IMG/VR virus record: IMGVR_UViG_3300030041_000009
Location: 1-64,000 of that record
Direction: 5' to 3' (one strand)
Length of the DNA: 64,000 nt
How positions within the stretch are numbered: position 1 is the first letter of the stretch; every line of letters begins with the position of its first letter. Below are positions 8,306 to 50,866 of this stretch, piece by piece. A program made the position numbers and the translations under genes. The notes under the pieces are model-generated. The model had not been told where the DNA came from. It was given only the letters and a program-made list of their open reading frames with translations, and made no database searches.

Positions 8306-8363
8306 AAAAAATCCAGAACTAATCTGGATTTATTGTTTATTTAAAAAGATTAATATTATTTAA
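8306..8363 (+). repeat. Imperfect direct repeat (terminator plus flank); second copy at 11471-11524
   Basis: AAAAAA(T/G)CCAGAACTAATCTG...TTTATTTAAAAAGATTAATAT(T/C)ATTTAA in both copies. Confidence 0.7.
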
Positions 8364-8602
8364 CTTATTTCATATTCACTTTTTATTTTTAATAACTTAA
8401 GTTTTCTCTGTTCTTGAAGTGTACAGAAATATTCATAGAAATTAGGATAATCTCCTACAAATTTAGTTTTATTAAGAGAAAATATTCCAAAATTATACAA
8501 ATAAACTATATAATCATCATAAAATATAATATAATAATATTCACCTTCAATATAATTATTATATGCCTTTTTACAAATATATTTTGTATTTTTATTTAAC
8601 AT
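8360..8602 (-). CDS. Small protein with RKLKLLKI tag
   Basis: Ends FCTLQEQRKLKLLKIK. Confidence 0.6.
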   Translation of the reverse strand: MLNKNTKYICKKAYNNYIEGEYYYIIFYDDYIVYLYNFGIFSLNKTKFVGDYPNFYEYFCTLQEQRKLKLLKIKSEYEIS

Positions 8603-8728
8603 TATTTATATTTTTAAATTGAAGCATCATTTTCATGATTTTTAATTTTTACAAAGATAATGAAATTATTTGATATTACAAAAAAATAATAAATATTTTT
8701 ATATATAGTAGAAATAAATATTTTAAAT

Positions 8729-9388
8729 ATGAGTAGAATTAATAAATTTGATGAGTTTGTAAATGAGTATAATTATAAATTTGATGATTCAGAATTTTAT
8801 GATTCAGAATTTGATGACCCTGAATTCTATGACCCTGATTATGATGACTCTGTATTTGATGACCCAACAATGGGTGGTTTAAGTATTGATACTTTACAAA
8901 TTGCCGCAGATAAATATAAAACAAAAGAAGAATTTATTAAAAATGATCCAAGAGCTTATGATATTGCTCTTAAAAGTAATTTATTAGATTACTTATTCAA
9001 TAAACAATCTAAACAAGTGCCAAAAGGATATTGGACAGAAGAAAACCTTCAAAAAGAAGCTGATAAATATGAATTACGAAATGATTTCAAAGATAATAAT
9101 GCTTCAGCATATAATATTGCTTGTGATAAAGACATATTAGATAAATTGTTTAACGATCATGAGAATCAAGGATATGCGGAAAAACATAATCCTAATAAAG
9201 TTTTTACGAAAAAACAATTACAAAATATAGTAAATAAATATAAAACACGAAGAGAATTTCAAAAAAATGATTCAGAAGCATATTCTAATGCTGTTAGAAA
9301 TAGTTTACTAGATGAATTGTTCAAAGATAAACCAAACCAAGGATATAAAGGAAATCAAAGACAAAATAATAAAAATGACATCAGATGA
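8729..9388 (+). CDS. CTS-like leader, acidic repeats and three HEG-type helical repeats; no nuclease domain
   Basis: MSRINKFDEFVNE; (D)DSEFY repeats; WTEENLQKEADKY repeats like those in 14449-15747. Confidence 0.7.
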   Translation: MSRINKFDEFVNEYNYKFDDSEFYDSEFDDPEFYDPDYDDSVFDDPTMGGLSIDTLQIAADKYKTKEEFIKNDPRAYDIALKSNLLDYLFNKQSKQVPKGYWTEENLQKEADKYELRNDFKDNNASAYNIACDKDILDKLFNDHENQGYAEKHNPNKVFTKKQLQNIVNKYKTRREFQKNDSEAYSNAVRNSLLDELFKDKPNQGYKGNQRQNNKNDIR

Positions 9389-9522
9389 TGTCATTTTTAT
9401 TTTTAGTAATTTAAATTTTATTTCTTCTATTCTACTGTAAAAATAATCCGTAATTCTACTATCACAAGTTAATATAGAAATATTATAGAAACATTTAGAT
9501 TTCAATGTATCTATATATTTTT

Positions 9523-10455
9523 TTATTCATATTTTTGTTTAAAAATGAATTTTTTATGAATATAAAGAAGTAAATCTTTTATATTAATTGTATCTGATTT
9601 GTTATTTTTAAATTCATTTATAGATAAAATATCATCCAAAACTTTATATCCTTCTATTATATATTCATCAGATTTAGTAATAAAATATTTTTTCCAATTT
9701 TCAAAAAATATAAATATATCATTTTTATCTGCACATAAATTACCACCAAAATAATTTATAAAAATATTTACTTTATCTATAATATCTTGCTCATTAATTA
9801 ATTTATTATAATCAAATGATTTTAAAATATTAAAAGATTTATACATGTAAGAATCATGATATAACCTATATAATTCTTCTTTAGAACACTTACAATTTAT
9901 AAACATCTCCCATATCATAGTATTTCTAGCTATTAATTCGTGTTCTAATGATAAATAAATTAATTGTAAAAAATCTATAAAATATTTATTGCTTTCATTT
10001 TTAAGTAACTCAGTATAAAATAAAGAATTTGTGAATGATTTCATATCACTTTCTTCATTTATAGTGTAAACATCATAGATATGTCTTATTTCATGACTTA
10101 TAACTGAACATAATTTATCTACATTTAAATTTATATCATCAATTATAATTGGTATTATTGTTCTATCTTTTCCTGTTACTAAATCATTTATATTTACATT
10201 TGAATAGTAAATAATATCTTTATCCTCATATCTTATTTCAGAATTCAATTTGTTAAATTTAACATCTAATTCTATGATCAAATTACAAAATTCTAATGAA
10301 TTTAAATCTATATTTTTTTTAAATGATTTCGTTTGATTGCCTATAATTTGCCTTATTTCATTAAATAACTTTTTTAATTCATCTGGAATTTCTTTATTGA
10401 ATGATTCATATGTTTTTATGTATTTATTCCATAAATTTTTATTTAATATTTTCAT
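9523..10455 (-). CDS. HExxH (gluzincin-like) metallopeptidase, paralogue 1
   Basis: SHEIRH...YLSLEHELIAR. Confidence 0.7.
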   Translation of the reverse strand: MKILNKNLWNKYIKTYESFNKEIPDELKKLFNEIRQIIGNQTKSFKKNIDLNSLEFCNLIIELDVKFNKLNSEIRYEDKDIIYYSNVNINDLVTGKDRTIIPIIIDDINLNVDKLCSVISHEIRHIYDVYTINEESDMKSFTNSLFYTELLKNESNKYFIDFLQLIYLSLEHELIARNTMIWEMFINCKCSKEELYRLYHDSYMYKSFNILKSFDYNKLINEQDIIDKVNIFINYFGGNLCADKNDIFIFFENWKKYFITKSDEYIIEGYKVLDDILSINEFKNNKSDTINIKDLLLYIHKKFIFKQKYE

Positions 10456-10537
10456 ATAAAGTTTTTATTTATATATAAAAAGATAATAAATCTAATATTA
10501 ATTTTTAATATATAAACGAAATAAAATTTTTAAAATT

Positions 10538-11452
10538 ATGAAATATGTAAAAACATTTGAATTATATCGTGACTATGATATAGATTCTGTTGGTAATCTT
10601 GCTGTTGGTAATCTTGGTGGCTATCCTAATAATAAAAAACAATTATTAGCTTATATAGAAGCTGGCGGCGATATTGATGTTATAGATAAAAATGGAAACA
10701 CTCCTTTAATTAGATCTGTTACAAATAGCAAGAGTGAACTGACAAATATTTTAATTAAAAGTGGAGCAGATTTAAATATTCAAAATAATAATGGAGAAAC
10801 AGCATTAATGAAAGCAACAAAAAATAGAGATGTCATGAGATACATTAGTTTATTGATAGATGCTGGTGCAGATTGGAATATAGAAAAATATGACAAATTT
10901 TTATCATCTGTAGAAAATCCTATCTCTTATAGAGACAAATTATTAGCTAATATTGATTTTTTTGAGATGTTAACACCAAAATATCAAGAATTAACAAAAG
11001 AAAAATATCCAGAAAAATATAACTATTATTTAAGTAAAAAAGAAAGTTCAAATTCAAATTCAAATTCAAATTCACAGAATAATAAAGGAGATACAGCATT
11101 AATTTATGCAGTGAAAGATAGAAACATTAAACGTGTAGAATCTTTAATAAAATCTGGTGCAAATTTGAATATACAGAATAATAAAGGTGAAACAGCATTA
11201 ATTATTGCTGCTCGTTATCTAAATATGAATATAATTTATAAATTGATAGAAGCTGGATCAGATTGGAATATAACTAAATATAAAGATAATACTATTCTTT
11301 CATTTAATTCTATTAATGGTGGTAAACCTTATACGCCGAGAGGTAAATTTTATGAAGAAAAAGATTTTTTTGAAATATTATCACCAAAATATCAAGAAAT
11401 ATTAAAAGAGAAATATCCAGAAAAATATGCTAAATATTTGGCAAAAAAATAA
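10538..11452 (+). CDS. Ankyrin-repeat protein, internally duplicated, CTS-like leader
   Basis: GNTPLI/GETALM/GDTALI/GETALI repeats; duplicated DFFExLxPKYQExxKEKYPEKY; (AATTCA)n linker. Confidence 0.85.
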   Translation: MKYVKTFELYRDYDIDSVGNLAVGNLGGYPNNKKQLLAYIEAGGDIDVIDKNGNTPLIRSVTNSKSELTNILIKSGADLNIQNNNGETALMKATKNRDVMRYISLLIDAGADWNIEKYDKFLSSVENPISYRDKLLANIDFFEMLTPKYQELTKEKYPEKYNYYLSKKESSNSNSNSNSQNNKGDTALIYAVKDRNIKRVESLIKSGANLNIQNNKGETALIIAARYLNMNIIYKLIEAGSDWNITKYKDNTILSFNSINGGKPYTPRGKFYEEKDFFEILSPKYQEILKEKYPEKYAKYLAKK

Positions 11453-11530
11453 TATTCAAATTGAAAAATAAAAAAAGCCAGAACTAATCTGACTTTTTTA
11501 TTTAAAAAGATTAATATCATTTAATATCAT

Positions 11531-12094
11531 TCAATTTAAAATATTAAATAATATATATTCATTTGACATTATCAACTTAAATGAATAATTTCCATAATCT
11601 AAATTTTCAAGTTCAATTAAATATGAACTATCGCCGTATTTTGTAGCTTTATATTCAATTGTGTTTGGATTTTTTGATTCACCTCCACCAAAAACACTAC
11701 CAGTTGCTATTACAATAGATAGATATTTTTCACCTTCTGGTTCTAATTTTATAATCTTTATAATAGTAGTAGGATCAATTGTATTATTAAAACATTTAAT
11801 GATAAATTTATTGTTTTTATTTTTGAATGTGTATGAACCATTATCATGTGATAAAAATCTCAATCTTATTGTAGCTTTACCAGCAAATAACCCAACATAT
11901 GGTATATAAGATGCAGCATTTGCATTATTTTTATATGTTGGTATTTGTTTTTTTAATAATATACCGTCGCCAATTGTGTCATTGACATATACAACATTAT
12001 TTAAAAATTCAGGTTCTTTTATTTTTATTGTTTGTGTGAAAGAATTAATGCTAAAAATAATTAACATTATTAAAAATAATATATTTTTTTTCAT
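11531..12094 (-). CDS. Secreted/periplasmic protein with signal peptide
   Basis: MKKNILFLIMLIIFSINSFTQ Sec signal with +1 Gln, typical of Bacteroidota. Confidence 0.65.
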   Translation of the reverse strand: MKKNILFLIMLIIFSINSFTQTIKIKEPEFLNNVVYVNDTIGDGILLKKQIPTYKNNANAASYIPYVGLFAGKATIRLRFLSHDNGSYTFKNKNNKFIIKCFNNTIDPTTIIKIIKLEPEGEKYLSIVIATGSVFGGGESKNPNTIEYKATKYGDSSYLIELENLDYGNYSFKLIMSNEYILFNILN

Positions 12095-12273
12095 ATTTGT
12101 TAGACGATAACCTATACATCGTGAGGTTTTGGATTTTAAGATTTTTGAAAAACAAATATACAAAAAAAGTTTGGATTAACCAAACTTTTTTAAATATTTT
12201 TAATAAATTACTATACTAAAAATTATAAATATTACAATCCATATACTATTATCTTCTCAATATTTTTAAAATT

Positions 12274-13116
12274 TTATTTTTTAAAATTATTAAAATCAGA
12301 TATATATTTATTATAATCAATAACTTTTGATTTATTATATGTATTTGAAACATAAGTCTCAAAAATTTCCCAGTCTTTTTCTATTTCATTCAAAATTCTT
12401 TCAGAATTTTTTAAAAAAACATCTGATTTTAATTTAAATATTTTAAACCAGAAATTTAGCCAAGTTTCAATACTATTTGAAGTTATTGTTTTAACATCGT
12501 TTTTAATAAGTATATCATTAAAATCATCAACTTCTTTTTGTTTTAATTGTGAAACAAGAATACTCATTTTTATATTTTTTATATTATCATATAATTTATA
12601 TGTTTCCCAATCTTTTAATCTTAATATAGCATCATCTTTTGAACATCTACCTTCACTTTTAATATAAATATAAGTTTGAGCAACATTAGCATTAACTTCA
12701 TTGTCCAATGTTTTATAAAAAATATCAGTAATAAATTCCATTGCATTAGACATAGAATAATTTTTAAATTTTAATAAAGATGTTTTTATTTTATTATATT
12801 TTGGATAGTCCTTATCTCCAATACCTAAAATTTCTATAACATGAGTTAGCTCATGCGATATATTTTCCTTAACTCTATTTTCATTACCATTTGTTGGTAT
12901 TCCAATATTAACTATAATATTATTAGGTTTAATAATTTTAATGTTTGAGTAATAACTATTTATATTGTTAAAAATTATTGTAATATCTCTATATCCAATA
13001 TCATCACGTCCAAATTTTAATATGTGAGATGAATATGAATTATTAATAAATAATTTCCATATATTGTTTACTTCGTTCTTTATTATATCTGATATACCTT
13101 TACCCTCATTTAACAT
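12274..13116 (-). CDS. HExxH metallopeptidase, paralogue 2
   Basis: LNEGKGIS leader; SHELTH...YKTLDNEVNAN. Confidence 0.7.
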   Translation of the reverse strand: MLNEGKGISDIIKNEVNNIWKLFINNSYSSHILKFGRDDIGYRDITIIFNNINSYYSNIKIIKPNNIIVNIGIPTNGNENRVKENISHELTHVIEILGIGDKDYPKYNKIKTSLLKFKNYSMSNAMEFITDIFYKTLDNEVNANVAQTYIYIKSEGRCSKDDAILRLKDWETYKLYDNIKNIKMSILVSQLKQKEVDDFNDILIKNDVKTITSNSIETWLNFWFKIFKLKSDVFLKNSERILNEIEKDWEIFETYVSNTYNKSKVIDYNKYISDFNNFKK

Positions 13117-13236
13117 ATACTTATTCTATTTTTATTATATATTAAAGAATATATGTTATATTATTAAAAAATCAGAATAATTACTATTGATTTTTAATTT
13201 TACTAATTATTCTCAATACTAATATCTTCACAATAT

Positions 13237-13500
13237 TTATATCATTTCATATGTTTTTTGATACATATGTTCAATTTTATTAAGTTCTAATATATCATAA
13301 ATATCATCAGTTTCCATAGATATAAATGAAGTATCATCTTCATTTAATAATGATAATAATTTTTCAAATTTTATTTTGAAAAAATCACGAGTTTTTTCAT
13401 TAACATCTAAGACATCCCAATAAAAATCCCAAGTATCATTAGTTTTAACTAATGCAGAACAACAAAATTCAAATTCTTTTTTTAATTCTTTTTTATTCAT
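13237..13500 (-). CDS. Hypothetical protein (possible immunity partner of 13497-13958)
   Basis: Acidic 87 aa ORF overlapping the upstream stop. Confidence 0.5.
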   Translation of the reverse strand: MNKKELKKEFEFCCSALVKTNDTWDFYWDVLDVNEKTRDFFKIKFEKLLSLLNEDDTSFISMETDDIYDILELNKIEHMYQKTYEMI

Positions 13501-13979: not shown

Positions 13980-14138
13980 TTATTTTTTTATTTTACTAAT
14001 TATTATTTTCTCAATATATTCAGAATAATTCTCAATCCCATTATCCTCACAATATTTTTGCCAAAGTTCATACACTTCAGGATCAATAGATACTGATAAC
14101 TTTTTTCTTTTCTTATCTTCTGGCACAGTCTTTCTCAT
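13980..14138 (-). CDS. Ribbon-helix-helix (CopG-like) protein, not in the ORF track
   Basis: MRKTVPEDKKRKKLSVSIDPEVYELWQKYCEDNGIENYSEYIEKII. Confidence 0.7.
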   Translation of the reverse strand: MRKTVPEDKKRKKLSVSIDPEVYELWQKYCEDNGIENYSEYIEKIIISKIKK

Positions 14139-14269
14139 GACATATATAATAAAATTATTTTAAAATGTTTTATTTTTATTAAACTTTTTCTTAATAATTA
14201 ACTACAATTATTATAAAATTGTCAAAAAATGATTTTTGTATATTAATATATACAATAAAAATAATAATT

Positions 14270-14452
14270 ATGAGAAGAAAAATAGAAAAAAAGAAAATGA
14301 CATTTTCAATATCATTTGATCCAGATATATTAAATACTGTAAATAATACAATAGCAAATAGATCAAAATATATACAAAATATTATGATAGATGAAATGTG
14401 CAAAAATTATGAAATAAAAGAAGAACTAAAAAATAAACATATTATATTATGA
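14270..14452 (+). CDS. Ribbon-helix-helix protein
   Basis: KKMTFSISFDPDIL...NRSKYIQNIM. Confidence 0.7.
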   Translation: MRRKIEKKKMTFSISFDPDILNTVNNTIANRSKYIQNIMIDEMCKNYEIKEELKNKHIIL

Positions 14453-15747
14453 AGTGGACTAAGGAAATGTTGCAGGAAGAAGCAAACAAATATACAAATA
14501 GAATGGAATTTAGAGAAAATAGCAAAGCGGCTTACAGATATTCATATAGAAATCATATAATGAATGAATTATTCGAAAAACATATAAATAAAGGATATAT
14601 TATAACATGGACTAAAAAAAAATTAAAATATACCAACAAGCAGTTACAAGAAGAGGCTAATAAGTATTTTACTCGTGGAGAATTTATTAAAAATAATAAA
14701 CCTGCGTATCAATATTCATGTAGCAAAAATATGATAGATGATTTGTTTAAAAATCATAAAAATAATGGATATTATATAAAATGGACTGATGAAAAATTAC
14801 AAGAAGAGTCTAATAAATATTGTACTAGATGTGAATTTCAACAAAAATCGAATGGTGCATATTTATCTGCAGTTAGAAGAAATCTGATGGATGATTTATT
14901 TAAAAATCATAATAATAATGGATATTCAGATAAATACTCTAAAAATTATATTTATTTTGTTTATGTTTATGAATTGATAGATTATAATAAAGCTTATATT
15001 GGATTGACTATTAATATTGATAGAAGAGACAAAGAGCACGTATTTGATCAAAATGAAAAATTAAATAAATTTTGTAAAGAATCTAATATTTCATATCCAA
15101 AATATAAAATATTAGATTCTAATTTAAATTCAATAGATGCTAAAGAAGCTGAAATATTTTGGATTGATTATTATAAACAAAATAATTGGAAATTATTTAA
15201 TATTGCGAAAGGAGGTTCTTTAGGTGGCAAACCTTTTAAATGGACCGAAAATAAATTAATAAAATACGTTAAAAAATATAAAACTAGAGGAGATTTTTGT
15301 AATGATAACGAATCTGCATATAATTCTGCAAATAGATTAAAAATAATGGACAAATTATTCGAAAATCATATAAATAGTGGTTATACTAATAGACAAGTTA
15401 AAGAAGGATATTGGACGAAAGAAAAAATACAAGAAGAAGCTAACAAATATAATACTATAATGCAATTTAGAAAAGAATGTAGTAAAGCATATCATGCGGC
15501 AAGTAATTTAAAAATAATTGATGAATTATTTAAAAATCATATTAATCAAGGCAGGACAGCAAAGCATAAATATTATTGGACAACAGAAAGATTACAAGAA
15601 GAAGCTAACAAATATAAAACAAGAAATGATTTTAGAAAAAATGATATAAACTCTTATAGTTATTCTAAAACTAAAAAAATATTAAATGAATTATTTAAAA
15701 ATCATATAAATCAAGGATATATTCAAAAACAAAAAAAGTCAGAATAA
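14449..15747 (+). CDS. GIY-YIG homing endonuclease flanked by six helical repeats
   Basis: VYVY...YIGLT...RRDKEH...E...N; WTxEKLQEEANKY repeats on both sides. Confidence 0.8.
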   Translation: MKWTKEMLQEEANKYTNRMEFRENSKAAYRYSYRNHIMNELFEKHINKGYIITWTKKKLKYTNKQLQEEANKYFTRGEFIKNNKPAYQYSCSKNMIDDLFKNHKNNGYYIKWTDEKLQEESNKYCTRCEFQQKSNGAYLSAVRRNLMDDLFKNHNNNGYSDKYSKNYIYFVYVYELIDYNKAYIGLTINIDRRDKEHVFDQNEKLNKFCKESNISYPKYKILDSNLNSIDAKEAEIFWIDYYKQNNWKLFNIAKGGSLGGKPFKWTENKLIKYVKKYKTRGDFCNDNESAYNSANRLKIMDKLFENHINSGYTNRQVKEGYWTKEKIQEEANKYNTIMQFRKECSKAYHAASNLKIIDELFKNHINQGRTAKHKYYWTTERLQEEANKYKTRNDFRKNDINSYSYSKTKKILNELFKNHINQGYIQKQKKSE

Positions 15748-15783
15748 TTATTCTGACTTTTTGTTTTTGAATTATTTTAAAAA

Positions 15784-41265: not shown

Positions 41266-41360
41266 ATTATATTTTTTTCAAAGATAATAAAAAAAAATTG
41301 AATTACCTACTATTTTAAAAATATTTATATAAAAAAAGTCCCATAAAGAGACTTTTTAAT

Positions 41361-41432
41361 TTGAGCAAGTGGTCTGATTTGAACAGAATCCTTTAACTGG
41401 AAGCTAAACGCATTAACATATGCTACCACTGC
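41361..41432 (-). tRNA. tRNA-Gly(TCC)-like, atypical (copy 1)
   Basis: GCAGTGG...TTTAG-CTTCCAG-TTAAA...TCTG-TTCAAAT-CAGA-CCACTTGC-TCAA; bulged acceptor stem, 4 bp T stem. Confidence 0.7.
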
Positions 41433-41435
41433 ATT

Positions 41436-42293
41436 TTAATAATATCTATATTTTTCATTCATATTTCCTTGATCCTTAATAACTTCATTAATTATAGATA
41501 ATAACTTTTTTTTATTTTTAATACATTTATTTTTAAATATATTTTCCCATTTTTTAAAATAATCTATTAATGGTAAATTTGAATCTATAAAATCTAAATT
41601 GTAATTATTTTTAATAATTTGTTCATTTAAATGATTAATTAAAACTATTAACGCTGGCTCTGATATTTTTTCTAACATATAATTATAAAATTTTTCAGCA
41701 TTAAAACTATCCAATTCTTCATATTTTTTCCATGATTCACATTCTTTAATTTTTTCTAATAAAATATTTTTATCTATGCTATTAAATTTCATTAAAAAAT
41801 GATACGCTTCTGAAACTCTAGCGTTTAATTCATTATCCAAAGATAAATAAATAAAATATGTAAAATCATTTAAAGGTGTCTCGATTTTGTTAAAATTTGT
41901 TATAATTTTTTGTAAATTAACATGAGTAGGTAAATCTCTTTGATTCTTAACCAAATTATAAAATTCTAAAACATGAGTCAATTCATGAGATATTTTACTT
42001 TTTATGATGTAATCATCAGTTCCAATAGGAACAAAAAAGTATAAATTTATATTTTTTAATATATTATTTGAAAAAGTATAATTTATAGGATCAAATTTAG
42101 CATAACAATCTAATCTTTTTTCAAAATTAATAGTCAATTTAATATTATATAAAGGAAATAAAATATCTTTTAAATCTAAAAAAATAATCTTATCTTCATA
42201 GTCTAAAAAATTAGTATAAATAATATCAGAATATGTTTTAATAATGTTAGAAATACCATTACCTTCATTGATAAAATTTAAATACTTTTTCAT
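41436..42293 (-). CDS. HExxH metallopeptidase, paralogue 3
   Basis: MKKYLNFINEGNGIS; SHELTH...YLSLDNELNAR. Confidence 0.7.
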   Translation of the reverse strand: MKKYLNFINEGNGISNIIKTYSDIIYTNFLDYEDKIIFLDLKDILFPLYNIKLTINFEKRLDCYAKFDPINYTFSNNILKNINLYFFVPIGTDDYIIKSKISHELTHVLEFYNLVKNQRDLPTHVNLQKIITNFNKIETPLNDFTYFIYLSLDNELNARVSEAYHFLMKFNSIDKNILLEKIKECESWKKYEELDSFNAEKFYNYMLEKISEPALIVLINHLNEQIIKNNYNLDFIDSNLPLIDYFKKWENIFKNKCIKNKKKLLSIINEVIKDQGNMNEKYRYY

Positions 42294-43264
42294 ATTGGTA
42301 TATTAAAATTTTCATTTAATAAATTTTTAAAAAATATAGGATCATATAAATACATTCTATTAAAATCTTTATGAAATATTGCAGATGGTATCGATGAGAA
42401 CTCTAAATTACCCTCATTAATCCTATTATCAACACTTGATATTTTACTTTTTATATATTTTAACCTAATATCAAATAATTCTTTAAGATCAATTAAAAAT
42501 TTATCATTATTAGTTTCTTTCCATATAGATTTATTTAATTTCTTAATATATTTCTTATTTTTTGAATAATAATAAATACTCTGATATATTTTATCTTTTA
42601 ATAAATTTAATTCAATTTCTTCTATATTACTAAGCTTTTTTATATTAAATTTTTCAATATCTTTAATATTATCAAATATTTTATTGTATTTTTTACCAAT
42701 CTTACTAAAATAATAATATTGATGTATTTGAGCATCGATTTCATGACTTAAAGTTTTATATAATAATTCAATTATATTATTAATATAATCTGATTTAAAA
42801 TTGTTTCTAAATTGACTCAAAATAACTCCGATAGACCAAGAAGATGACCTAAATTTATTATTTTTAGAAATATTGTAATATTGAAAAATGTGTAAACATT
42901 CATGTAAAATGACAGAATCTATATAATCATTAAAATATATCTCATCTTTATCAGAAATATAAATATCTAAAACTATTTCAATATTAGATAAAATATCATT
43001 ACTCATTTTAGAGTTATTAAATCTAGCAACAGAGTTGCAAACATTTTCTTTATATTTATATAAATTAAATATTACTTTAATATTATCTAATTTTAAGTCA
43101 TTTTCAGATAATTCATAAGTAAACTCATTACTTAAATTAATATTATTAAAATTAATTAATATATTATGCAAATCTTTTGATATAGTCTCCTGTAAAATTT
43201 CACAAGAATCAGATATCGATTTTCTTTCTAATAAATATGTGTTGTAATTGTTTAAATAATCCAT
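42290..43264 (-). CDS. HExxH metallopeptidase, paralogue 4 (start MDYLNNY)
   Basis: LHECLH...YKTLSHEIDAQ; the longer track ORF extends into the tRNA. Confidence 0.7.
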   Translation of the reverse strand: MDYLNNYNTYLLERKSISDSCEILQETISKDLHNILINFNNINLSNEFTYELSENDLKLDNIKVIFNLYKYKENVCNSVARFNNSKMSNDILSNIEIVLDIYISDKDEIYFNDYIDSVILHECLHIFQYYNISKNNKFRSSSWSIGVILSQFRNNFKSDYINNIIELLYKTLSHEIDAQIHQYYYFSKIGKKYNKIFDNIKDIEKFNIKKLSNIEEIELNLLKDKIYQSIYYYSKNKKYIKKLNKSIWKETNNDKFLIDLKELFDIRLKYIKSKISSVDNRINEGNLEFSSIPSAIFHKDFNRMYLYDPIFFKNLLNENFNIPI

Positions 43265-43273
43265 AATATAAAT

Positions 43274-43345
43274 TTGAGCAAGTGGTCTGATTTGAACAGA
43301 ATCCTTTAACTGGAAGCTAAACGCATTAACATATGCTACCACTGC
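43274..43345 (-). tRNA. tRNA-Gly(TCC)-like (copy 2, identical)
   Basis: Inside the 88 bp perfect direct repeat 43271-43358 = 41358-41445. Confidence 0.7.
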
Positions 43346-43379
43346 ATTTTAATAATATAGTAATTAAATATTAAAAAGT

Positions 43380-43706
43380 TTATAAATTAAATTTTTTAAT
43401 ATCATATTTTATTTGTATTTCTGGATCTAATTTTACATCATTTAAAACCTTAGCAGTATCTAAATAAATTTTTTTATCTAAATCACATACATTAAAATTC
43501 TCAATTAATGTATCAATATCAAAAATATCTTCAATTTCATAATCTATATCATTGTCTTTATATTCATTGCAAATATGATTTATAGTAAAATTATTTCTGC
43601 TTAATTTATCATCAAATGAATACATATCATTTATACCACAATCTGATATAGTACAAAGATAAATTATTGTTCCAGTATTATTTTCAAATAATTTTAAATG
43701 CTTCAT
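43380..43706 (-). CDS. Hypothetical protein with CTS-like leader and KKFNL tail
   Basis: MKHLKLFE...DIKKFNL. Confidence 0.6.
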   Translation of the reverse strand: MKHLKLFENNTGTIIYLCTISDCGINDMYSFDDKLSRNNFTINHICNEYKDNDIDYEIEDIFDIDTLIENFNVCDLDKKIYLDTAKVLNDVKLDPEIQIKYDIKKFNL

Positions 43707-43707
43707 A

Positions 43708-45309
43708 TTATTTTTTTAAAGTATATATAAATTTTAAAAATCCAGAATCATATATGCGATATACCTTCCGTTCTAACATAATTTCATGCTCTGTTTTATT
43801 TATATCAAATCCTTCTGTTACTAATTTATTTTTACGAAAATTACATTTATTATGCCTAATATTATCAATAATATATTGATAATCTGGCTTAACTTTATCG
43901 ACAAAATCAAATCCTATTTTTTTATATAAATTAATTTGACTAAAACTTCTATCAAAATAACATACTATTTCTTTCGCACTATATTTATTTATAAAATAAT
44001 TTAATAACGTAATTTCACTATCAATAATATTAGTATTTATTTTATTACTAAAACTTATCATCTCATAATTATTATTCTTAATATTAAATGTCATTAAACT
44101 AATTAATTCATTACCTAAATATAAACCAATTTTTATATTAGATTTAATATATCCATGTATATCATTTTTTTCTAAATAACTTTTAATTAAATTTATATCT
44201 AAAACTTCTCTTATTTCACAATCTTTTGAATCAATTACGTTTTCAAAAATATTTAATTTACTTAATATTATAGATTTTATAATTTCATTATTATAAATCC
44301 AGTCATCTTCATAAATATGAATCAATTGAATGCCTTGTTTTTCACATTCTTCAGTTTTATTTAAATGATAATCTTTATCTTTATTTAATTCATTGTGCCA
44401 CCATAAACCATTAAATTCAAATGCTAATTTCAAATTAGGTAAATAAATATCTAATTCTAAAGGATTTAAAATTTTTCTATCATTCAAAATTATCTCATCA
44501 TTATAATTTTCTTTAATAAAACCTAATAATTGTAACTCTAACCCACTAACATTTTTTGAAATTGGATTGCATTCTGTACATAATATTGTTTTATTATTTA
44601 TCCTATTCCACAATAATTTATAATCAATATTAAAATGATGATCTTTATGTAAATCACATTTAAATTCATATTGACCATTTGATAAATATCCAACAAATAT
44701 ATCTTTTCTATCTCTAATAATTTCAGATTTATATAATCCTTTATCAAAATTTTTCTTAAAACTAATAAATTGATTTTCTCTCATTTTAATAGATATTTCT
44801 GCATTTTGACTAGCATATTCTACTCCATATCTTTCTAAATTCGTTGATTTCATTTTATATGGATTTGTATAGTTAGCATCTCCATATTTTTCTAATTTAC
44901 TTACATGTCCTTTTTTGTTAATTTCTTTAGATTGCTGAGGATATTCGACACCAAAATTTTTTAAACAAGTTTCTACTTTTTTATCTTTAATAATTTGAGA
45001 ATTTGAAACATTTTCTACTCCATATTTTTCTAAATTTGTATTTTTTGATTTTTGTTCAGAACATTTTCTACTACAAGCATAATATGTTGTTGAATTTTTT
45101 GTGTTATAATTATATCTACTATATGAAATAATAGTTTCTTCGCCACAAACATCACATTTTGCTTTAATTTTTGATACACTTCTTGTAGGTAAATCTATTG
45201 CAAGTATAGAAATAATTTCATTTCCTCCTTTTACTTCATACCCTTTTTCTTTATAATATTTAATTTGATTATTAGATATTTTTACATCGACATACTTTGT
45301 CAAAATCAT
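43708..45309 (-). CDS. Hef-like homing endonuclease (Vsr/PD-(D/E)xK type)
   Basis: CDVCG, KYGV repeats, ELDIYLP...AFEFNGLWWH...IHIYEDDW. Confidence 0.75.
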   Translation of the reverse strand: MILTKYVDVKISNNQIKYYKEKGYEVKGGNEIISILAIDLPTRSVSKIKAKCDVCGEETIISYSRYNYNTKNSTTYYACSRKCSEQKSKNTNLEKYGVENVSNSQIIKDKKVETCLKNFGVEYPQQSKEINKKGHVSKLEKYGDANYTNPYKMKSTNLERYGVEYASQNAEISIKMRENQFISFKKNFDKGLYKSEIIRDRKDIFVGYLSNGQYEFKCDLHKDHHFNIDYKLLWNRINNKTILCTECNPISKNVSGLELQLLGFIKENYNDEIILNDRKILNPLELDIYLPNLKLAFEFNGLWWHNELNKDKDYHLNKTEECEKQGIQLIHIYEDDWIYNNEIIKSIILSKLNIFENVIDSKDCEIREVLDINLIKSYLEKNDIHGYIKSNIKIGLYLGNELISLMTFNIKNNNYEMISFSNKINTNIIDSEITLLNYFINKYSAKEIVCYFDRSFSQINLYKKIGFDFVDKVKPDYQYIIDNIRHNKCNFRKNKLVTEGFDINKTEHEIMLERKVYRIYDSGFLKFIYTLKK

Positions 45310-45371
45310 AACATTTTTTATTTTATATATAAAAATAAAAATATAAAAAAATTATATTTTTATTTATTATT

Positions 45372-46856: not shown

Positions 46857-47005
46857 ATATTATTTTTTAATTTATTTTTTAATAAAGTTTCAATGAATTT
46901 TGATTTAGATTTTTTAATATATTTATCTAATAATTCATAAATATATGGATTTAGTGAAAAACTCACTGTAATTTTTTTTTCACTATCTAACATTTTTTTC
47001 TTCAT
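46853..47005 (-). CDS. Ribbon-helix-helix protein, not in the ORF track
   Basis: MKKKMLDSEKKITVSFSLNPYIYELLDKYIKKSKSKFIETLL. Confidence 0.65.
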   Translation of the reverse strand: MKKKMLDSEKKITVSFSLNPYIYELLDKYIKKSKSKFIETLLKNKLKNNI

Positions 47006-47110
47006 ATAATTTATATATGTTTTTATATTATTTGTTTGTTATTTTATAAATAAGATATATTCTTGTGTTATGACTTGAAATTATTTATATATAGAATAAA
47101 AATAAAAGTT

Positions 47111-47275
47111 ATGAAAAAAGTTGAAGAAAAAAAGAGGAAAATAACAATAACATTAAGTCCTGACATACTTATATTATTAGATGATAAAACATCTAATAGA
47201 TCTAATTATGTAGATAATTTATTATTAGAATATTTTAATAAATTAGGAGAAGATGTATCAAAAATAAAATTATAA
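47111..47275 (+). CDS. Ribbon-helix-helix protein
   Basis: KRKITITLSPDIL...NRSNYVDNLL. Confidence 0.7.
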   Translation: MKKVEEKKRKITITLSPDILILLDDKTSNRSNYVDNLLLEYFNKLGEDVSKIKL

Positions 47276-47277
47276 TA

Positions 47278-48492
47278 ATGAGAAAATTAACTACAAATGA
47301 ATTTATAGAAAAATCAAATGAGATACATAATAATAGATATGATTATTCAAATACTATTTATACTGGTTGTAAAAATGATGTCGAAATAATTTGTTCAATA
47401 CACGGAAAATTTACTCAAAATGCTCAATCTCATTTAAATGGGCATGAATGTACGAAATGTTCTGGTCATTATATATATTCTAAAATAGAATTTATTGAAA
47501 AAGCTAATATTGTACATAATAAATATGACTATAGTTTAACGAATTATATAAATAGTAGAAATAAGATTAAAATAATATGTCCGATTCACGGAGAATTTAT
47601 CATAAGGGCGAATAATCATTTACTTGGAATAGGATGTTCAAAATGTAGTGGAAAAAATAAAAATATATCTGAAATAATTGATGATTTTAATAAAATATAT
47701 GATTATAAATATGATTATAGTTTAGTTAATAATTATAAAGATAAACATTCTATAATTAAAATAATATGTCCAATTCACGGAGAATTCGAAAAAATTGCAT
47801 ATGCTCATAACAATGGTCACGGATGTCCAAAATGCGGCATAAATACATTATCTACTTCTAAATTTATAGAATTATCAAAATTAAATCATAATAATAAATA
47901 TGATTATAGTTTAGTTAAATATAATGGTGTTATGAATACTGTAAAAATAATATGTCCAATACATGGTATGTTTGAACAGATTAGTAGATTTCATTTAAAT
48001 GGTAGTGATTGTCCAAACTGTTCAGAATCTAAAGGTGAAAAAGAAATCAGAAATTATTTAGATAATAATAATATAACTGAGAATGAATTTAATAAATTAT
48101 TTAAAAAATATTATAAACAATGTTACATATATGATGCTTCTATAATGTTAGATAAATTTAATTTAAAAAATTTTAGTAGATTAAATTCTAATAATTTGGT
48201 TATATTTTTTAATGTTTTAAATGATAAAAAGAATTTATTGAAAATACATCAAAAAAGTGGAAAATTTAAAAAATTTTTATTAGATATTTATGATGTGTTA
48301 ACTAACCGTTATTTTAATGATTATTATTATAAAAAAATAGATAAGAGTATTAAAATAGAAAATTTGGATAATATATTAGAAATTTATGATAAAAGATTTA
48401 AGAATGCATCAAAAACTATTAAAAATAAGTTATCTAAATTATATAGTTTAATATTAGATGAATTAAAACATGAAAATTTAATAAAAAATTAA
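47278..48492 (+). CDS. Chimera: four C[PS]IHG zinc repeats (HEG type) fused to a metallopeptidase C-terminal domain
   Basis: C[PS]IHG..F...H..G..CxxC four times, SKGE, then about 140 aa matching the end of 49934-50866. Confidence 0.75.
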   Translation: MRKLTTNEFIEKSNEIHNNRYDYSNTIYTGCKNDVEIICSIHGKFTQNAQSHLNGHECTKCSGHYIYSKIEFIEKANIVHNKYDYSLTNYINSRNKIKIICPIHGEFIIRANNHLLGIGCSKCSGKNKNISEIIDDFNKIYDYKYDYSLVNNYKDKHSIIKIICPIHGEFEKIAYAHNNGHGCPKCGINTLSTSKFIELSKLNHNNKYDYSLVKYNGVMNTVKIICPIHGMFEQISRFHLNGSDCPNCSESKGEKEIRNYLDNNNITENEFNKLFKKYYKQCYIYDASIMLDKFNLKNFSRLNSNNLVIFFNVLNDKKNLLKIHQKSGKFKKFLLDIYDVLTNRYFNDYYYKKIDKSIKIENLDNILEIYDKRFKNASKTIKNKLSKLYSLILDELKHENLIKN

Positions 48493-48549
48493 TTATAAAA
48501 TTGAATCTTTTAATATTAATATATAAAAGTATAAAAATTTAAATTAAAA

Positions 48550-48936
48550 ATGGAAGATAAAGATAAAAAACTAGAATTTATCGGTAAAGTGGTTAAAATG
48601 CCAAAAAACACTAAAGCAAAAAATGCATACAATTTTTTAGAAAACATAAAAGTTTCAAAAAGTAAATTGTGGTATATTCTTATTGAAAAAGATGAGAATA
48701 AGTTACAATGTATTAAATATAATAATAAAATGGGTGTTAATTTAACTTTATTAATAGAAGGAATGAAGAATTATTATGAAAAGGATGAGAACATTCAGAA
48801 ATATATTAATGAGCTTAAAATTGAAGGTAATGATAAATTTAGTATAATTACAGCTATTCCTGATGTAGAAATTTTACCAGGTAAAAAAATGATAACGTTT
48901 TTAACAGAGAATTTAATACAGTTATTATATAAATAA
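48550..48936 (+). CDS. Hypothetical protein, paralogue of 34277-34774
   Basis: Shared motifs. Confidence 0.65.
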   Translation: MEDKDKKLEFIGKVVKMPKNTKAKNAYNFLENIKVSKSKLWYILIEKDENKLQCIKYNNKMGVNLTLLIEGMKNYYEKDENIQKYINELKIEGNDKFSIITAIPDVEILPGKKMITFLTENLIQLLYK

Positions 48937-48948
48937 AAAATTAAATAT

Positions 48949-49893
48949 ATGATAAATAATTACGATGAATATATATTAGAAAATAGAGGAATATCAAATA
49001 TTATAAAACAATATACAGATATAATATTTATAGAAATTAAAAAAAATATAGAAGATAATATTTCAGATGAAATAATATTAGATTTAGATGCTCAGAATGA
49101 TTTTATTTTAAAAAATATGTTAATTGATTATAAATTATCTAATAGAAATTATGGATTATTTGATTCATCTCATATTATATTTAAAGATGATATATTATAT
49201 AATGTTATAATTAGAATTGAAATAGATCAAAATAAATTCAACGACGTAAAAATAAAGGAAATAATAACTCACGAATTGACTCACATTTTAGAATATTTTA
49301 GAATAAAACAAAATGATGTAAAATTAAATTTAAATATTAACGTTGATCCGAACTATATTTCAGTTCGTAAATCTATAAACTATATTAATTTTGATAATGA
49401 GTGGAATAGTTTTAAAACTCTGATTTATTTATCTTTAGATACTGAATATAACGCAAGGATTGCACAACTTTATCAATTTTTAATAGATTTTAATTCAAAA
49501 GATAGTGATTTTTTAATGAATAAATTTTTAAATAGTGAAACTTATAAATGTTACAGTTATTTAGATGAATTTAATGCAGAACTATTTTTGATAAAATTAA
49601 AAATGAATATTGGAGAAAATACATTAATATCGGAAATTAATAGATTGAATCAGGAATTAATAAATAGTGGTGTAAACAAACTTAATGGTTATAAATTTAT
49701 AAAAATTGTTGATATAGATAATGTTGAAGCATATTTAAACAATTGGAAAAATTTATTTAAGAATAAAAATAAAAAACACATAAAAAAAATAAATTTGATT
49801 ATCAAAGAAGTTATATCCGATGTTAAAGATAATAAAAAATGGTGTGATAATTTTGAAATTGATGAGAGTTATAAAAATAGATTATTAGAATAA
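48949..49893 (+). CDS. HExxH metallopeptidase, paralogue 5
   Basis: MINNYDEYILENRGIS; THELTH...YLSLDTEYNAR. Confidence 0.7.
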   Translation: MINNYDEYILENRGISNIIKQYTDIIFIEIKKNIEDNISDEIILDLDAQNDFILKNMLIDYKLSNRNYGLFDSSHIIFKDDILYNVIIRIEIDQNKFNDVKIKEIITHELTHILEYFRIKQNDVKLNLNINVDPNYISVRKSINYINFDNEWNSFKTLIYLSLDTEYNARIAQLYQFLIDFNSKDSDFLMNKFLNSETYKCYSYLDEFNAELFLIKLKMNIGENTLISEINRLNQELINSGVNKLNGYKFIKIVDIDNVEAYLNNWKNLFKNKNKKHIKKINLIIKEVISDVKDNKKWCDNFEIDESYKNRLLE

Positions 49894-49933
49894 ATTATAT
49901 AATTAAAAAATAAATTGAATTATAAATAAAATA

Positions 49934-50866
49934 ATGATAATAAAAAATAAAATATTTAATTTAATAGTAGAGAAAGTTGGAATTGAGTTGGATATTAAAG
50001 ATTTAAGTGATCAAATTTATAAATTGATTATAAATGATAAAAAATTATATTATAAATTTGATGGTAAGTTATTTGATGTTAGAATTATGCACATTAATTC
50101 AATACTGATATTTATATCAAACAATGATTCTTCATTTGATGCATCATCTTCAACATTAACTGAAAAAGGATTTGATATTATATTGAATATAAATAAGAAT
50201 GATATAGAAACTAAAGTTATACATCACGAATTAAATCATGCTTTAAAATTTTATATGATAGGTAAAGAAAAATATATAGATAAAACTCGTGAATTAAAAA
50301 GTTATAAAATGAGTAGAACTTTTATTAAAAACCCAGATATTGAAGATTTTATAGATTTGGTTTATTATTCTGATTTAGAAGAAGTTGATTCTTTCATTAG
50401 TGAAGCATATTATGAAATTATGGAAAATTTTAAAAAAATTGGTAGAGTTATAACTAATATAGAATTTAATAAATATTTTAATTCATTTCACAAAGATACT
50501 TACATATATAAAATGTCTGATGTATTATATAATTATAATTTTAAAATATTAAAAAAATATAATTCTGATATGCTGGTTGTATTTTTTAATGTTTTAAATG
50601 ATAAAAAAAATTTATTAATAATATCAAAAAAAAGTGGAAAATTTAAAAAATTTTTATTGAATATTATAAATTTATTTAATGATAAATATTATATGAGTTG
50701 GTATTATAGTAGAATAGATAAAAACATTAAAATTGAGAATTTAGATGAGATATTAGAAATATATGATAAAAGATTTAAAAGTGCATCAAAAACTATTAAA
50801 AATAAATTATCTAAATTATATAGTTTAATCTTGGAAGAATTAAAGAATGAAAATTTAATAAAATAA
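49934..50866 (+). CDS. HExxH metallopeptidase, paralogue 6
   Basis: HHELNH...YYSDLEEVDSF. Confidence 0.65.
   Translation: MIIKNKIFNLIVEKVGIELDIKDLSDQIYKLIINDKKLYYKFDGKLFDVRIMHINSILIFISNNDSSFDASSSTLTEKGFDIILNINKNDIETKVIHHELNHALKFYMIGKEKYIDKTRELKSYKMSRTFIKNPDIEDFIDLVYYSDLEEVDSFISEAYYEIMENFKKIGRVITNIEFNKYFNSFHKDTYIYKMSDVLYNYNFKILKKYNSDMLVVFFNVLNDKKNLLIISKKSGKFKKFLLNIINLFNDKYYMSWYYSRIDKNIKIENLDEILEIYDKRFKSASKTIKNKLSKLYSLILEELKNENLIK

What the first reader, a model, noticed from the sequence alone, without database searches (positions are those of the whole stretch)
8306..50866. Every metallopeptidase locus is bracketed by direct repeats of local sequence
Gene 9523 lies between terminator repeats (8306 and 11471). 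Gene 12274 lies between RHH-gene remnants (about 12245 and 13200). Genes 41436 and 42290 lie between tRNA copies. Genes 48949 and 49934 lie with the duplicated 48073-48492 and 50450-50866 segments. Inference: a common duplication-insertion mechanism, possibly break repair driven by the many homing nucleases, spreads these cassettes.
Basis: inference. Interest (0 to 1): 0.6.

Follow-up and report, generated by a model that had tools for sequence, protein, structure and literature searches.

The report
Insertion scars in a phage's variable islands
The repeats around the six HExxH genes are real, but they look like scars of gene modules recombined into three variable, homing-nuclease-rich islands of an uncultivated huge phage, a process already described in T4-like phages, and they are not a special property of the peptidase-like genes.

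Summary
The window is the first 64 kb of a 256-kb, 22% GC fragment of a huge phage from peat. The phage carries a CRISPR array and Cas3.

**The genes.** The six HExxH genes form one orphan zincin-like family. They are old paralogs (25-37% identity), and each has closer relatives in other phages.

**The repeats.** Three of the four repeat pairs are confirmed at the stated places:
- 61 nt at 87% identity (a terminator);
- 88 nt at 100% (a tRNA-like gene);
- 416 nt at 78%.

The fourth is only a 23-nt motif, the 3' end of an Arc-like gene, present three times. The 416-nt pair is not a bracket. It is the 3' half of a third family gene, intact in a sister strain and here fused to a homing-endonuclease remnant.

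**The islands.** Two collinear relatives (G004, G005) lack all six genes. The genes lie in three accessory islands that also hold homing endonuclease genes. A third relative has the tRNA-like gene once, with no insert, so it shows an empty site.

**Not specific to this family.**
- The best single-gene bracket surrounds a GIY-YIG endonuclease.
- About 16% of all genes are bracketed.
- Only 1 of 18 family loci in other phages has a strong bracket.

**Verdict.** These are insertion scars of modular shuffling, plausibly triggered by homing nucleases. This is a known kind of process.

The parts
8303..8363 (.). T1: terminator hairpin plus about 30 nt. Left copy of the 61-nt repeat, and the left edge of island A.
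   Evidence: It is the ortholog of the G004 Hsp70 terminator region together with its left context.
11468..11524 (.). T2: second copy of the same terminator cassette, in the middle of island A.
15721..15772 (.). T3: terminator of the Hsp70 gene. It is a diverged third member of the cassette (G005 type) and the right edge of island A.
   Evidence: Palindrome; alignment; matches to G004 and G005.
9523..10455 (-). HExxH family gene (310 aa), in island A.
   Evidence: Absent from G004 and G005.
8729..9388 (+). Remnant of a homing-endonuclease-type repeat protein. It is a paralog of the repeat modules of 14449-15747 and has no nuclease domain.
   Evidence: phrog_20046.
12274..13116 (-). HExxH family gene (280 aa), in island A.
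12243..12265 (-). 23-nt remnant of the 3' end of the Arc-like gene, just downstream of gene 12274.
13216..13238 (-). Second remnant of the same 3' end (about 35 nt alignable). It overlaps the stop codon of the 87-aa gene.
13980..14138 (-). 52-aa Arc-like ribbon-helix-helix ORF. Its 3' end (14035-14057) is the source of the motif.
   Evidence: (phrog_3180, E 0.005).
14449..15747 (+). Endonuclease-like repeat protein with a putative GIY-YIG core, flanked by repeated DNA-binding-type modules.
   Evidence: Sequence read; the GIY-YIG core is my reading of that sequence, since Pfam gave no hit. phrog_20046, function unknown. Paralogs.
41358..41445 (-). Copy 1 of the 88-nt exact repeat (tRNA-like gene 41364-41432). 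It is followed by the terminator, and its first 10 nt supply the last codons and stop of gene 41436.
41436..42293 (-). HExxH family gene (285 aa), part of the 1825-nt insert.
42290..43264 (-). HExxH family gene (324 aa from the ATG start). The 350-aa GTG reading overlaps the tRNA-like gene.
   Evidence: Its closest homolog lies 2 nt after a DUF7487 endonuclease gene.
43271..43358 (-). Copy 2 of the 88-nt exact repeat (tRNA-like gene 43277-43345). It keeps the ancestral upstream flank.
43708..45309 (-). HNH homing endonuclease (DUF7487), which follows the 494-aa PolB N-terminal ORF.
   Evidence: phrog_3339, E 4e-90. It is multi-copy in relatives.
47278..48492 (+). Fusion ORF. Residues 1 to about 262 are endonuclease-type zinc-finger repeats. 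Residues 266-403 (from about 48064) are the 3' half of a third HExxH family gene.
   Evidence: The sister strain L004/L005 has the intact 314-aa gene.
48949..49893 (+). HExxH family gene (314 aa), in island C.
   Evidence: Model with pLDDT 83.
49934..50866 (+). HExxH family gene (310 aa). Its 3' half (50449-50863) is the right copy of the 416-nt pair.
51654..52385 (-). GIY-YIG homing endonuclease gene. It is bracketed by 51549-51616 and 52402-52470, a 68-nt duplicate of the last 22 codons and stop of the GT6 gene.

Best explanation
The window belongs to an uncultivated huge phage. Its six HExxH genes are old members of a phage-only, zincin-like family. They sit in three accessory islands: about 8.3-15.8 kb, 41.3-45.4 kb, and 46.9-48.5 plus 48.9-52.4 kb. 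The closest collinear relatives lack these islands, and the islands are also rich in homing endonuclease genes.

The direct repeats are copies of whatever local sequence lay at the point where a gene module was recombined in:
- the terminator behind Hsp70 (three copies: T1, T2, T3);
- the 3' end of a small Arc-like gene (three copies);
- a tRNA-like gene that normally follows the HNH endonuclease gene as a single copy (two identical 88-nt copies around a two-gene insert);
- the 3' end of the GT6 gene, around a GIY-YIG endonuclease gene.

At locus 4 the 'repeat' is the rest of a third family gene, cut off by fusion to an endonuclease remnant.

The likely mechanism is a double-strand break, probably made by one of the resident homing endonucleases. 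The break is then repaired by the phage's recombination machinery through short homologies, which leaves the target sequence on both sides of the new DNA. This is modular shuffling of a hyperplastic region, not a mobility mechanism of the HExxH genes.

Shown: the repeats, the islands, the empty sites, the old age of the paralogs, and the endonuclease neighbours. Inferred: that the endonucleases made the breaks, and the exact repair route.
For: - **Islands and empty sites.** G004 and G005 are collinear with the whole window at 50-95% amino-acid identity and lack every HExxH gene and the islands. In G004 the PolB-N gene abuts the 160-aa gene. G001 has no family member in 159 kb. It has a single tRNA-like copy directly after its HNH endonuclease gene.
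- **Flanks of the 88-nt pair.** Copy 2 keeps the ancestral upstream flank (aligned with G001). Copy 1 is followed directly by a terminator, as a terminator also follows the single copy in G001, though that flank is not alignable.
- **Age mismatch.** The 88-nt copies are 100% identical while the two enclosed genes are about 27% identical. The insert therefore came in as old, diverged DNA.
- **Terminators.** T1 and T2 are of the G004 type and T3 of the G005 type.
- **Old paralogs.** Explaining the window's family genes on the tree needs 6 changes for 7 rows, the same as shuffled labels.
- **Locus 4.** Sister strains L004 and L005 are 99.99% identical from 48064 rightwards but carry an intact 314-aa gene to the left.
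- **Not specific to the family.** The top single-gene bracket is a GIY-YIG gene. 16% of genes are bracketed. 15 of 18 family loci in other phages have no bracket.
- **Endonucleases.** Six of nine endonuclease-like genes lie in the first 60 kb. The tRNA-like gene follows DUF7487 endonuclease genes in L020, L021, L065 and L046/L047.
- **Precedents.** PeSL-bounded module exchange (PMC2839356). SegB-dependent duplication of a tRNA segment with microhomology junctions (PMC13096335). Nuclease genes at boundaries of exchange between phages (PMC10448857; title and abstract only).
Against: - Within this genome the HExxH blocks do rank first and second among blocks of their size, so some enrichment remains. 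Among accessory genes of the window I count 4 of 6 family genes bracketed against 5 of 21 others (p about 0.07, my own arithmetic).
- Family genes lie next to DUF7487 or GIY-YIG endonuclease genes in several other phages. This could mean a closer tie than shared residence in variable regions.
- No break site, minicircle or deletion variant was seen. All 19-21 contigs of the same strain show the same arrangement, and the reads test failed.
- The T1/T2 cassette is local, not a dispersed family like PeSLs.
- Junction microhomology is only 7 nt in AT-rich DNA.
Confidence: 0.68

Rival explanations
1. The HExxH genes are cargo of a dedicated mobile unit. This could be the DUF7487 HNH endonuclease plus its tRNA-like target, or other endonuclease cassettes. 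They would be moved together with the nuclease gene by homing, leaving duplicated target sequence. This is.
For: Family genes lie within 0.4-2.5 kb of an endonuclease-like gene at all four loci. In other phages:
- the closest homolog of gene 42290 starts 2 nt after a DUF7487 gene;
- L161/L030 has a family gene between two DUF7487 copies, and L078 has one about 700 nt away;
- about 7-8 of 12 distinct close-relative loci have an endonuclease-like gene within 6 kb.
Against: - 15 of 18 family loci in relatives lack flanking repeats.
- A distant subfamily sits in a conserved place without endonucleases.
- The islands carry many other genes (ankyrin, Arc-like and small ORFs).
- Endonuclease density is high in these regions anyway (six in 60 kb), so adjacency inside the islands is near expectation.
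- No tRNA-like element lies near family genes in relatives.
Confidence: 0.12
2. The repeats are decayed remains of tandem segmental duplications (a genomic accordion). A segment holding local sequence plus genes was duplicated in place, and most of the second copy was later lost or diverged.
For: Locus 4 is a tandem array of family genes with a truncated member. The genome has many tandem paralog arrays, and SegB-type amplification gives tandem units (PMC13096335).
Against: At locus 3 the repeat is 100% identical while the enclosed genes are about 27% identical to each other and have no second copy. The six genes do not cluster in the tree. Relatives show empty sites with a single copy of the target.
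Confidence: 0.1
3. The repeats are functional elements kept alike by selection or gene conversion. On this view each transcription unit needs its own terminator, and two tRNA-like genes are useful. Their position around the HExxH genes would then be incidental.
For: Terminator-like hairpins are strongly enriched, 8 found against 0.2 expected. The tRNA-like fold is conserved, with compensatory changes in 15 of 20 pairs.
Against: - Identity extends 6 and 13 nt beyond the tRNA-like gene, and about 30 nt beyond the hairpin.
- Other terminators in the region are unrelated in sequence.
- Relatives have one copy at the empty site.
- The Arc-like remnants are non-coding fragments of a coding sequence.
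Confidence: 0.08

Closest known systems
PeSL-mediated modular shuffling in hyperplastic regions of T4-type phages (Arbiol et al. 2010, PMC2839356; PMC4122927)
   Same: Accessory genes are clustered in variable regions. The insertions and deletions that separate close relatives are bounded by copies of short regulatory cassettes holding a stem-loop terminator. Homologous exchange between the cassettes is the proposed route.
   Different: Here each locus duplicates its own local sequence (a terminator, a gene's 3' end, or a tRNA-like gene), not one dispersed cassette family. A promoter half was not shown, and minicircles could not be tested.
SegB-driven segmental amplification of a tRNA segment in phage T6 (PMC13096335)
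   Same: A free-standing homing endonuclease gene lies next to tRNA genes. The tRNA region is duplicated, with a junction between the 3' end of a gene and the 5' end of the tRNA, and that gene's C-terminus is altered.
   Different: In T6 the unit (tRNA plus truncated segB) is amplified in tandem and is unstable. Here only the 88-nt tRNA-like segment is doubled, around foreign old genes. The endonuclease is of HNH (DUF7487) type, not GIY-YIG SegB, and is not itself duplicated.
Nuclease genes at boundaries of genetic exchange between phages (PMC10448857; title and abstract only)
   Same: The switch from 99.99% identity to unrelated sequence between sister strains falls at the end of an endonuclease-derived ORF, near 48064. 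The islands are delimited by or contain endonuclease genes.
   Different: That work concerns ICP1-type vibriophages, according to my recollection and not checked here. This case is metagenomic only, and no cleavage sites are known.
Integrase-mediated insertion into tRNA genes (attL/attR duplication)
   Same: An insert is flanked by direct repeats that include a tRNA-like gene.
   Different: There is no integrase in or next to the 1825-nt insert, which holds only two HExxH ORFs. The whole gene plus both flanks is duplicated, not only a 3' core.
Zincin metallopeptidases of the IrrE/ImmA (M78) or M3 kind
   Same: An HExxH motif with a conserved Glu about 54 residues downstream. There is weak shape similarity to Atlas clusters named IrrE (M78) and M3.
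   Different: There is no Pfam, PHROG or PDB sequence match and no significant fold match in the PDB. No activity is known.

Membership tests
PeSL-type regulatory cassette shuffling | The cassette contains a stem-loop that works as a terminator. | tested here: met
   T1 and T2 hold terminator-like hairpins followed by T runs. 8 such sites were found in 6.5 kb against 0.2 expected. Function was not assayed.
PeSL-type regulatory cassette shuffling | The cassette also holds a strong sigma-70-like early promoter. | tested here: inconclusive
   Promoter-like matches equal the shuffled expectation, 78 against 78.7. A conserved motif upstream of small minus-strand genes near T1 was seen by eye only.
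PeSL-type regulatory cassette shuffling | One cassette family is dispersed through the variable regions. | tested here: not met
   The T1/T2 sequence occurs only at 8.3 and 11.5 kb, with a diverged T3 at 15.7 kb. The other repeats are unrelated local sequences.
PeSL-type regulatory cassette shuffling | Insertions and deletions between close relatives are bounded by the cassettes. | tested here: met
   Island A lies between T1 and T3. G004 and G005 have a single terminator there.
PeSL-type regulatory cassette shuffling | Minicircles are formed by exchange between neighbouring cassettes. | not testable with these tools
SegB-type endonuclease-driven segmental duplication | A free-standing homing endonuclease gene lies beside the tRNA gene that is duplicated. 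| tested here: met
   The HNH endonuclease gene 43708-45309 lies about 360 nt from copy 2. The same pairing occurs in L020, L021, L065 and L046/L047.
SegB-type endonuclease-driven segmental duplication | Tandem units each hold the tRNA and a truncated endonuclease gene. | tested here: not met
   Only the 88-nt segment is doubled. The endonuclease gene is single, and the enclosed DNA is two old HExxH genes.
SegB-type endonuclease-driven segmental duplication | The junction forms through microhomology between a gene's 3' end and the tRNA's 5' end. | tested here: inconclusive
   A 7-nt ATATTAT is shared by the start of the repeat and the start of the insert, but the DNA is 80% A+T.
SegB-type endonuclease-driven segmental duplication | The duplication depends on the nuclease activity and on phage recombination genes. 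| not testable with these tools
   This needs a cultivable phage and host.
Zincin (HExxH) metallopeptidase | An HExxH motif with a third zinc ligand conserved in the family. | tested here: met
   H108, H112, E166 and Y160 are invariant and E109 is at 90% or more in 19 sequences. The sister-strain copy has HGxxH.
Zincin (HExxH) metallopeptidase | A sequence match to a curated peptidase family. | tested here: not met
   No Pfam family for five of the six genes. One has a sub-threshold Tox-MPTase4 hit (16.4 bits against a cut-off of 25). No PHROG and no PDB sequence match.
Zincin (HExxH) metallopeptidase | A zincin fold. | tested here: inconclusive
   The model has pLDDT 83 and pTM 0.80. There is no Foldseek match at E up to 0.001, and only generic helical matches at Z 6 or below. 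Atlas neighbours are unnamed phage clusters (TM 0.65-0.69), with weak M3 and M78 rows.
Integrase-mediated tRNA-site integration | A tyrosine or serine recombinase is encoded in the inserted element. | tested here: not met
   The 1825-nt insert holds only the two HExxH ORFs, and neither has a Pfam recombinase hit.
Transposon with target-site duplication | Short target duplication and terminal inverted repeats. | tested here: not met
   The duplications are 23-88 nt long. No inverted repeat was found at the insert ends at E up to 1e-3.

The most novel reading that the evidence does not exclude
The DUF7487 HNH endonuclease and the tRNA-like gene that follows it form a homing unit whose cut site lies in or beside the tRNA-like gene. 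Repair of that cut captured a two-gene HExxH module with an exact 88-nt target duplication. More broadly, this orphan zincin-like family would be preferred cargo of homing endonuclease cassettes in huge phages, for example as an anti-defence or superinfection function that rides on homing.
Probability: 0.15. Interest if true: 0.55.

Novelty: new member of a known kind. Interest (0 to 1): 0.32.

Why it matters
The case gives a clean, dated example of how a huge phage's variable regions grow: an exact 88-nt target duplication, a single-copy empty site in a relative, and three nested island states. It ties that growth to homing endonuclease genes, in line with recent work on T4-like phages. It also flags an orphan HExxH family that recurs beside such nucleases. 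It does not reveal a new kind of mobile element.

Tried and rejected
- **Giant virus of eukaryotes.** Low GC, Hsp70, asparagine synthetase and ankyrin genes first suggested this. I rejected it for three reasons: a CRISPR array with Cas3, PHROG-type endonucleases, and Atlas neighbours that are all tailed-phage proteins. Searches for both capsid families (PF04451, PF07068) found nothing, but the record is only about 36% complete and the controls did not ring.
- **Assembly artefact.** Rejected. The same arrangement is in 19-21 contigs from independent assemblies. Short-k Logan contigs break at the 88-nt repeat, as expected for a true repeat.
- **Fold assignment of the family.** Foldseek against the PDB, VIA-align wide and a profile against PDB sequences gave nothing usable.
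- **Empty site for locus 1 through the 187-aa neighbour.** This found only the same strain. The empty site came later from G004 and G005.
- **Reads test for deletion or circle forms.** All runs were kept as contigs only. One exception: a local tblastn inside a script still held the protein that spans them. Later scripts and calls left that gene out.
- **Promoter scan.** It equals the shuffled expectation and is uninformative.
- **tRNA-like element near family genes in other phages.** None was found.
- **The large representative protein search.** Not used, because no claim here rests on absence of relatives.

Full report
**What the window is.** The window is the first 64 kb of a single 256,033-bp virus record with 22% GC. 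CheckV rates the record about 36% complete. It encodes Hsp70, asparagine synthetase, RtcB, a glutamine-dependent NAD synthase-like protein (NAD_synthase plus CN_hydrolase domains), PhoH, DHFR and a 494-aa N-terminal PolB fragment. Outside the window lie a 35-unit CRISPR array with a 36-nt repeat and, right beside it, a Cas3 gene. The endonuclease genes match phage families. The nearest structural neighbours of the HExxH protein are clusters of tailed-phage proteins. I therefore read it as an uncultivated huge phage. The sequencing runs that hold it are mainly peat metagenomes.

**The genes.** Only seven ORFs of the whole record carry HExxH, and six of them are the genes named in the finding. 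These six are one family, with 25-37% pairwise identity, and a profile of the six finds each at E 1e-73 or better. A seventh, partial member is the C-terminal 138 residues of ORF 47278-48492, which is 66% identical to the end of gene 49934. In an alignment of 19 members, H108, H112, Y160 and E166 are invariant and E109 nearly so. This is a zincin-like signature. Beyond the motif the family is an orphan:
- No Pfam, PHROG or PDB sequence match.
- A confident model (pLDDT 83) has no significant fold match in the PDB.
- In the Atlas it has only unnamed phage clusters plus weak M3 and M78 rows.

'Metallopeptidase' is therefore a motif-based guess.

**The repeats.** Self-BLASTN confirms three pairs at the stated places.
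- *Pair 1* is 8303-8363 vs 11468-11524, 61 nt at 87% identity. It consists of an intrinsic-terminator-like hairpin plus about 30 nt.
- *Pair 2* is 41358-41445 vs 43271-43358, 88 nt at 100% identity. Each copy holds a tRNA-like gene with a Gly-UCC-like anticodon loop. Rfam scores it at 36.7 bits and ARAGORN does not call it.
- *Pair 3* is 48072-48486 vs 50449-50863, 416 nt at 78% identity.
- *The fourth claimed pair* gives no BLAST hit. There is a 23-nt motif just after the stop of gene 12274 and again at the stop of the 87-aa gene. A third copy lies inside the 3' end of a 52-aa Arc-like ORF at 13980-14138.

**Are the repeats special to these genes?** I scored the two 200-nt flanks of every gene and of every block of two to four genes against each other.
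- The two-gene block 41436-43264 ranks first of 415, the four-gene block 8360-11452 ranks 2nd of 413, and gene 12274 ranks 34th of 416.
- The best single gene is the GIY-YIG endonuclease gene 51654-52385. It is flanked by a 68-nt copy of the last 22 codons and stop of the neighbouring GT6 gene.
- Genome-wide, 16% of 417 genes are bracketed by direct repeats up to 3.5 kb apart at E up to 1e-5. Most of these are in tandem arrays of small paralogs.
- In 18 loci of the family from other phages, 15 have no bracketing repeat. One has a strong bracket made of two endonuclease paralogs, and two have weak ones.

The pattern is therefore more than chance in this genome, but it is not a trait of the family.

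**Relatives give the history.** Two virus records, G004 and G005, are collinear with the whole window, gene by gene, at about 50-95% amino-acid identity. Both lack every HExxH gene. The missing DNA forms three islands.
- *Island A* lies between the small gene next to T1 and the stop of Hsp70. It holds two family genes, two endonuclease-like genes, an ankyrin gene and the Arc-like genes. G004 and G005 have only 0.7-1.1 kb there, with one Hsp70 terminator. T1 and T2 are of the G004 type of that terminator, and T1 keeps its left context. T3, the present Hsp70 terminator, is of the G005 type.
- *Island B* (41266-45371) holds the HNH endonuclease gene, a 108-aa gene, and the tRNA-like gene twice around two family genes. 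In G004 the PolB-N gene abuts the 160-aa gene directly.
  - A more distant relative, G001, has the endonuclease gene followed by one tRNA-like copy and no family gene in 159 kb. G005 also has a single copy.
  - Copy 2 in the window keeps the upstream flank seen in G001. Copy 1 is followed directly by a terminator, and G001 also has a terminator downstream of its single copy, although that flank does not align. This is the picture of an 1825-nt insertion with an exact 88-nt duplication of the target.
  - The two enclosed genes are only about 27% identical to each other. The insert is therefore old DNA that arrived recently.
- *Island C* flanks the conserved 128-aa gene. It holds the fusion ORF, two family genes and the GIY-YIG gene. 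G004 has none of these, and G005 has only the GIY-YIG gene.

**Locus 4.** Contigs L004 and L005 come from the same peat samples. They are 99.99% identical to the window from 48064 rightwards, but to the left they carry an intact 314-aa family gene. That gene has HGxxH in place of HExxH and a different upstream context. In the window, the 5' half of that gene is replaced in frame by zinc-finger repeats that match phage HNH endonuclease families. The 'duplicated segment' at 48072-48486 is thus the remnant of a third tandem family gene. The strain breakpoint falls at the end of an endonuclease-derived sequence.

**The six genes were not spread by duplication here.** I built a maximum-likelihood tree of 34 family members. 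In it, the window's genes need six changes for seven rows, the same as shuffled labels. Each has closer relatives in other phages, and only gene 49934 and the sister-strain gene pair up.

**Endonucleases.** Endonuclease-like genes or remnants in the window are:
- 8729-9388: repeat modules only;
- 14449-15747: repeat modules around a GIY-YIG-like core, read by eye, with no Pfam hit;
- 43708-45309: HNH, DUF7487, phrog_3339;
- 47278 to about 48063: a remnant;
- 51654-52385 and 58715-59638: 51654 is GIY-YIG with NUMOD3; 58715 has NUMOD3 and a sub-threshold SegE-type GIY-YIG hit.

Only three more lie in the remaining 196 kb. A covariance model of the tRNA-like gene finds it within about 35 nt of the end of DUF7487 genes in L020, L021, L065 and L046/L047. 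On those matches 99% of cells pair and 15 of 20 pairs show compensatory change, though the alignment is fitted to the model. Family genes also lie beside endonuclease genes in several other phages. The closest homolog of gene 42290 starts 2 nt after a DUF7487 gene. This leaves room for a closer tie between the family and these nucleases. The data at hand do not separate that from shared residence in variable regions.

**Mechanism and what is known.** The anatomy fits modular shuffling of hyperplastic regions as described for T4-type phages. There, insertions and deletions between close relatives are bounded by terminator-containing cassettes that recombine (PMC2839356). It also fits endonuclease-triggered duplication. 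In phage T6, SegB cuts within tRNA genes. With the phage recombination genes it produces tandem units whose junction joins the 3' end of a gene to the 5' end of the tRNA through microhomology (PMC13096335). In the window the junction likewise joins the end of gene 41436 to the 5' flank of the tRNA-like gene, and a 7-nt ATATTAT is shared. There are three differences from those precedents:
- Each locus duplicates its own local sequence, not one dispersed cassette.
- Only the target is doubled, not a whole unit.
- The endonuclease is of another family.

That the endonucleases made the breaks is inference. I worked beside those places afterwards. One local tblastn in a script still included the protein that spans them, and later steps left it out.

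**Verdict.** The claim that this is a feature of the metallopeptidase-like genes, or the way they spread, is not supported. This is a new instance of a known kind of phage genome plasticity.

Noticed in passing
outside the window: G000 128470-130811 and 130997-133294 (L105:4470-6811 and L105:6997-9294): A CRISPR-like array of about 35 units (36-nt repeat, about 30-nt spacers) lies directly beside a Cas3 gene (HD plus helicase). The phage carries its own CRISPR system.
   Followed up: partly
window 51549-51616 and 52402-52470 around 51654-52385: A GIY-YIG homing endonuclease gene is flanked by a 68-nt, about 98% identical copy of the last 22 codons and stop of the GT6 gene. Relative G005/L172 has the endonuclease gene at the same place without the duplicate, and G004/L170 has neither.
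   Followed up: partly
window 45372-46856 (-): A 494-aa ORF holds only the exonuclease domain and the start of the polymerase domain of a family B DNA polymerase, followed by an HNH endonuclease gene. The rest of the polymerase is not in the 256-kb record. The same 494-aa ORF is conserved in G001, G004 and G005, so the polymerase seems to be split.
   Followed up: partly
window 28541-29779 (-): A TnpB / IS605 OrfB-like gene (OrfB_IS605 plus Cas12f1-like TNB domain) that is absent from G004 and G005.
   Followed up: no
window 41364-41432 and 43277-43345; L020:9648-9723, L021:9484-9560, L065:6289-6368, L182:10067-10143: A tRNA-like gene that ARAGORN does not call is conserved right after DUF7487 HNH endonuclease genes in several related phages, with many compensatory changes. 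It may be the endonuclease's companion or target.
   Followed up: partly
L004:3424-4368 (sister strain): The intact third family gene of the sister strain has HGxxH where the others have HExxH. The presumed catalytic Glu is lost.
   Followed up: no
window 4234-5691 (-): The asparagine synthetase gene is missing from both collinear relatives, G004 and G005, so it is accessory here too. Hsp70, RtcB and the NAD synthase-like gene are shared.
   Followed up: no
outside the window: G000 about 248960-249031 (L111:4960-5031, - strand): ARAGORN calls a tRNA with a CTA anticodon, an amber-suppressor type. This is a possible hint of stop-codon recoding in part of the genome. ORFs in the window read well under code 11.
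   Followed up: no
outside the window: G000 202300-204900; 121700-125650; 185800-187400; 210500-213600; 244200-246300: There is a second long non-coding repeat region (93-nt units among others). There are also several tandem arrays of small paralogous genes whose gene junctions carry 37-47-nt conserved motifs.
   Followed up: no
window 13980-15747; 47063-48063; G000 120296-121413: A small Arc-like or RHH-like gene pair followed by an endonuclease-type repeat protein recurs three times. This looks like a cassette type of its own.
   Followed up: partly
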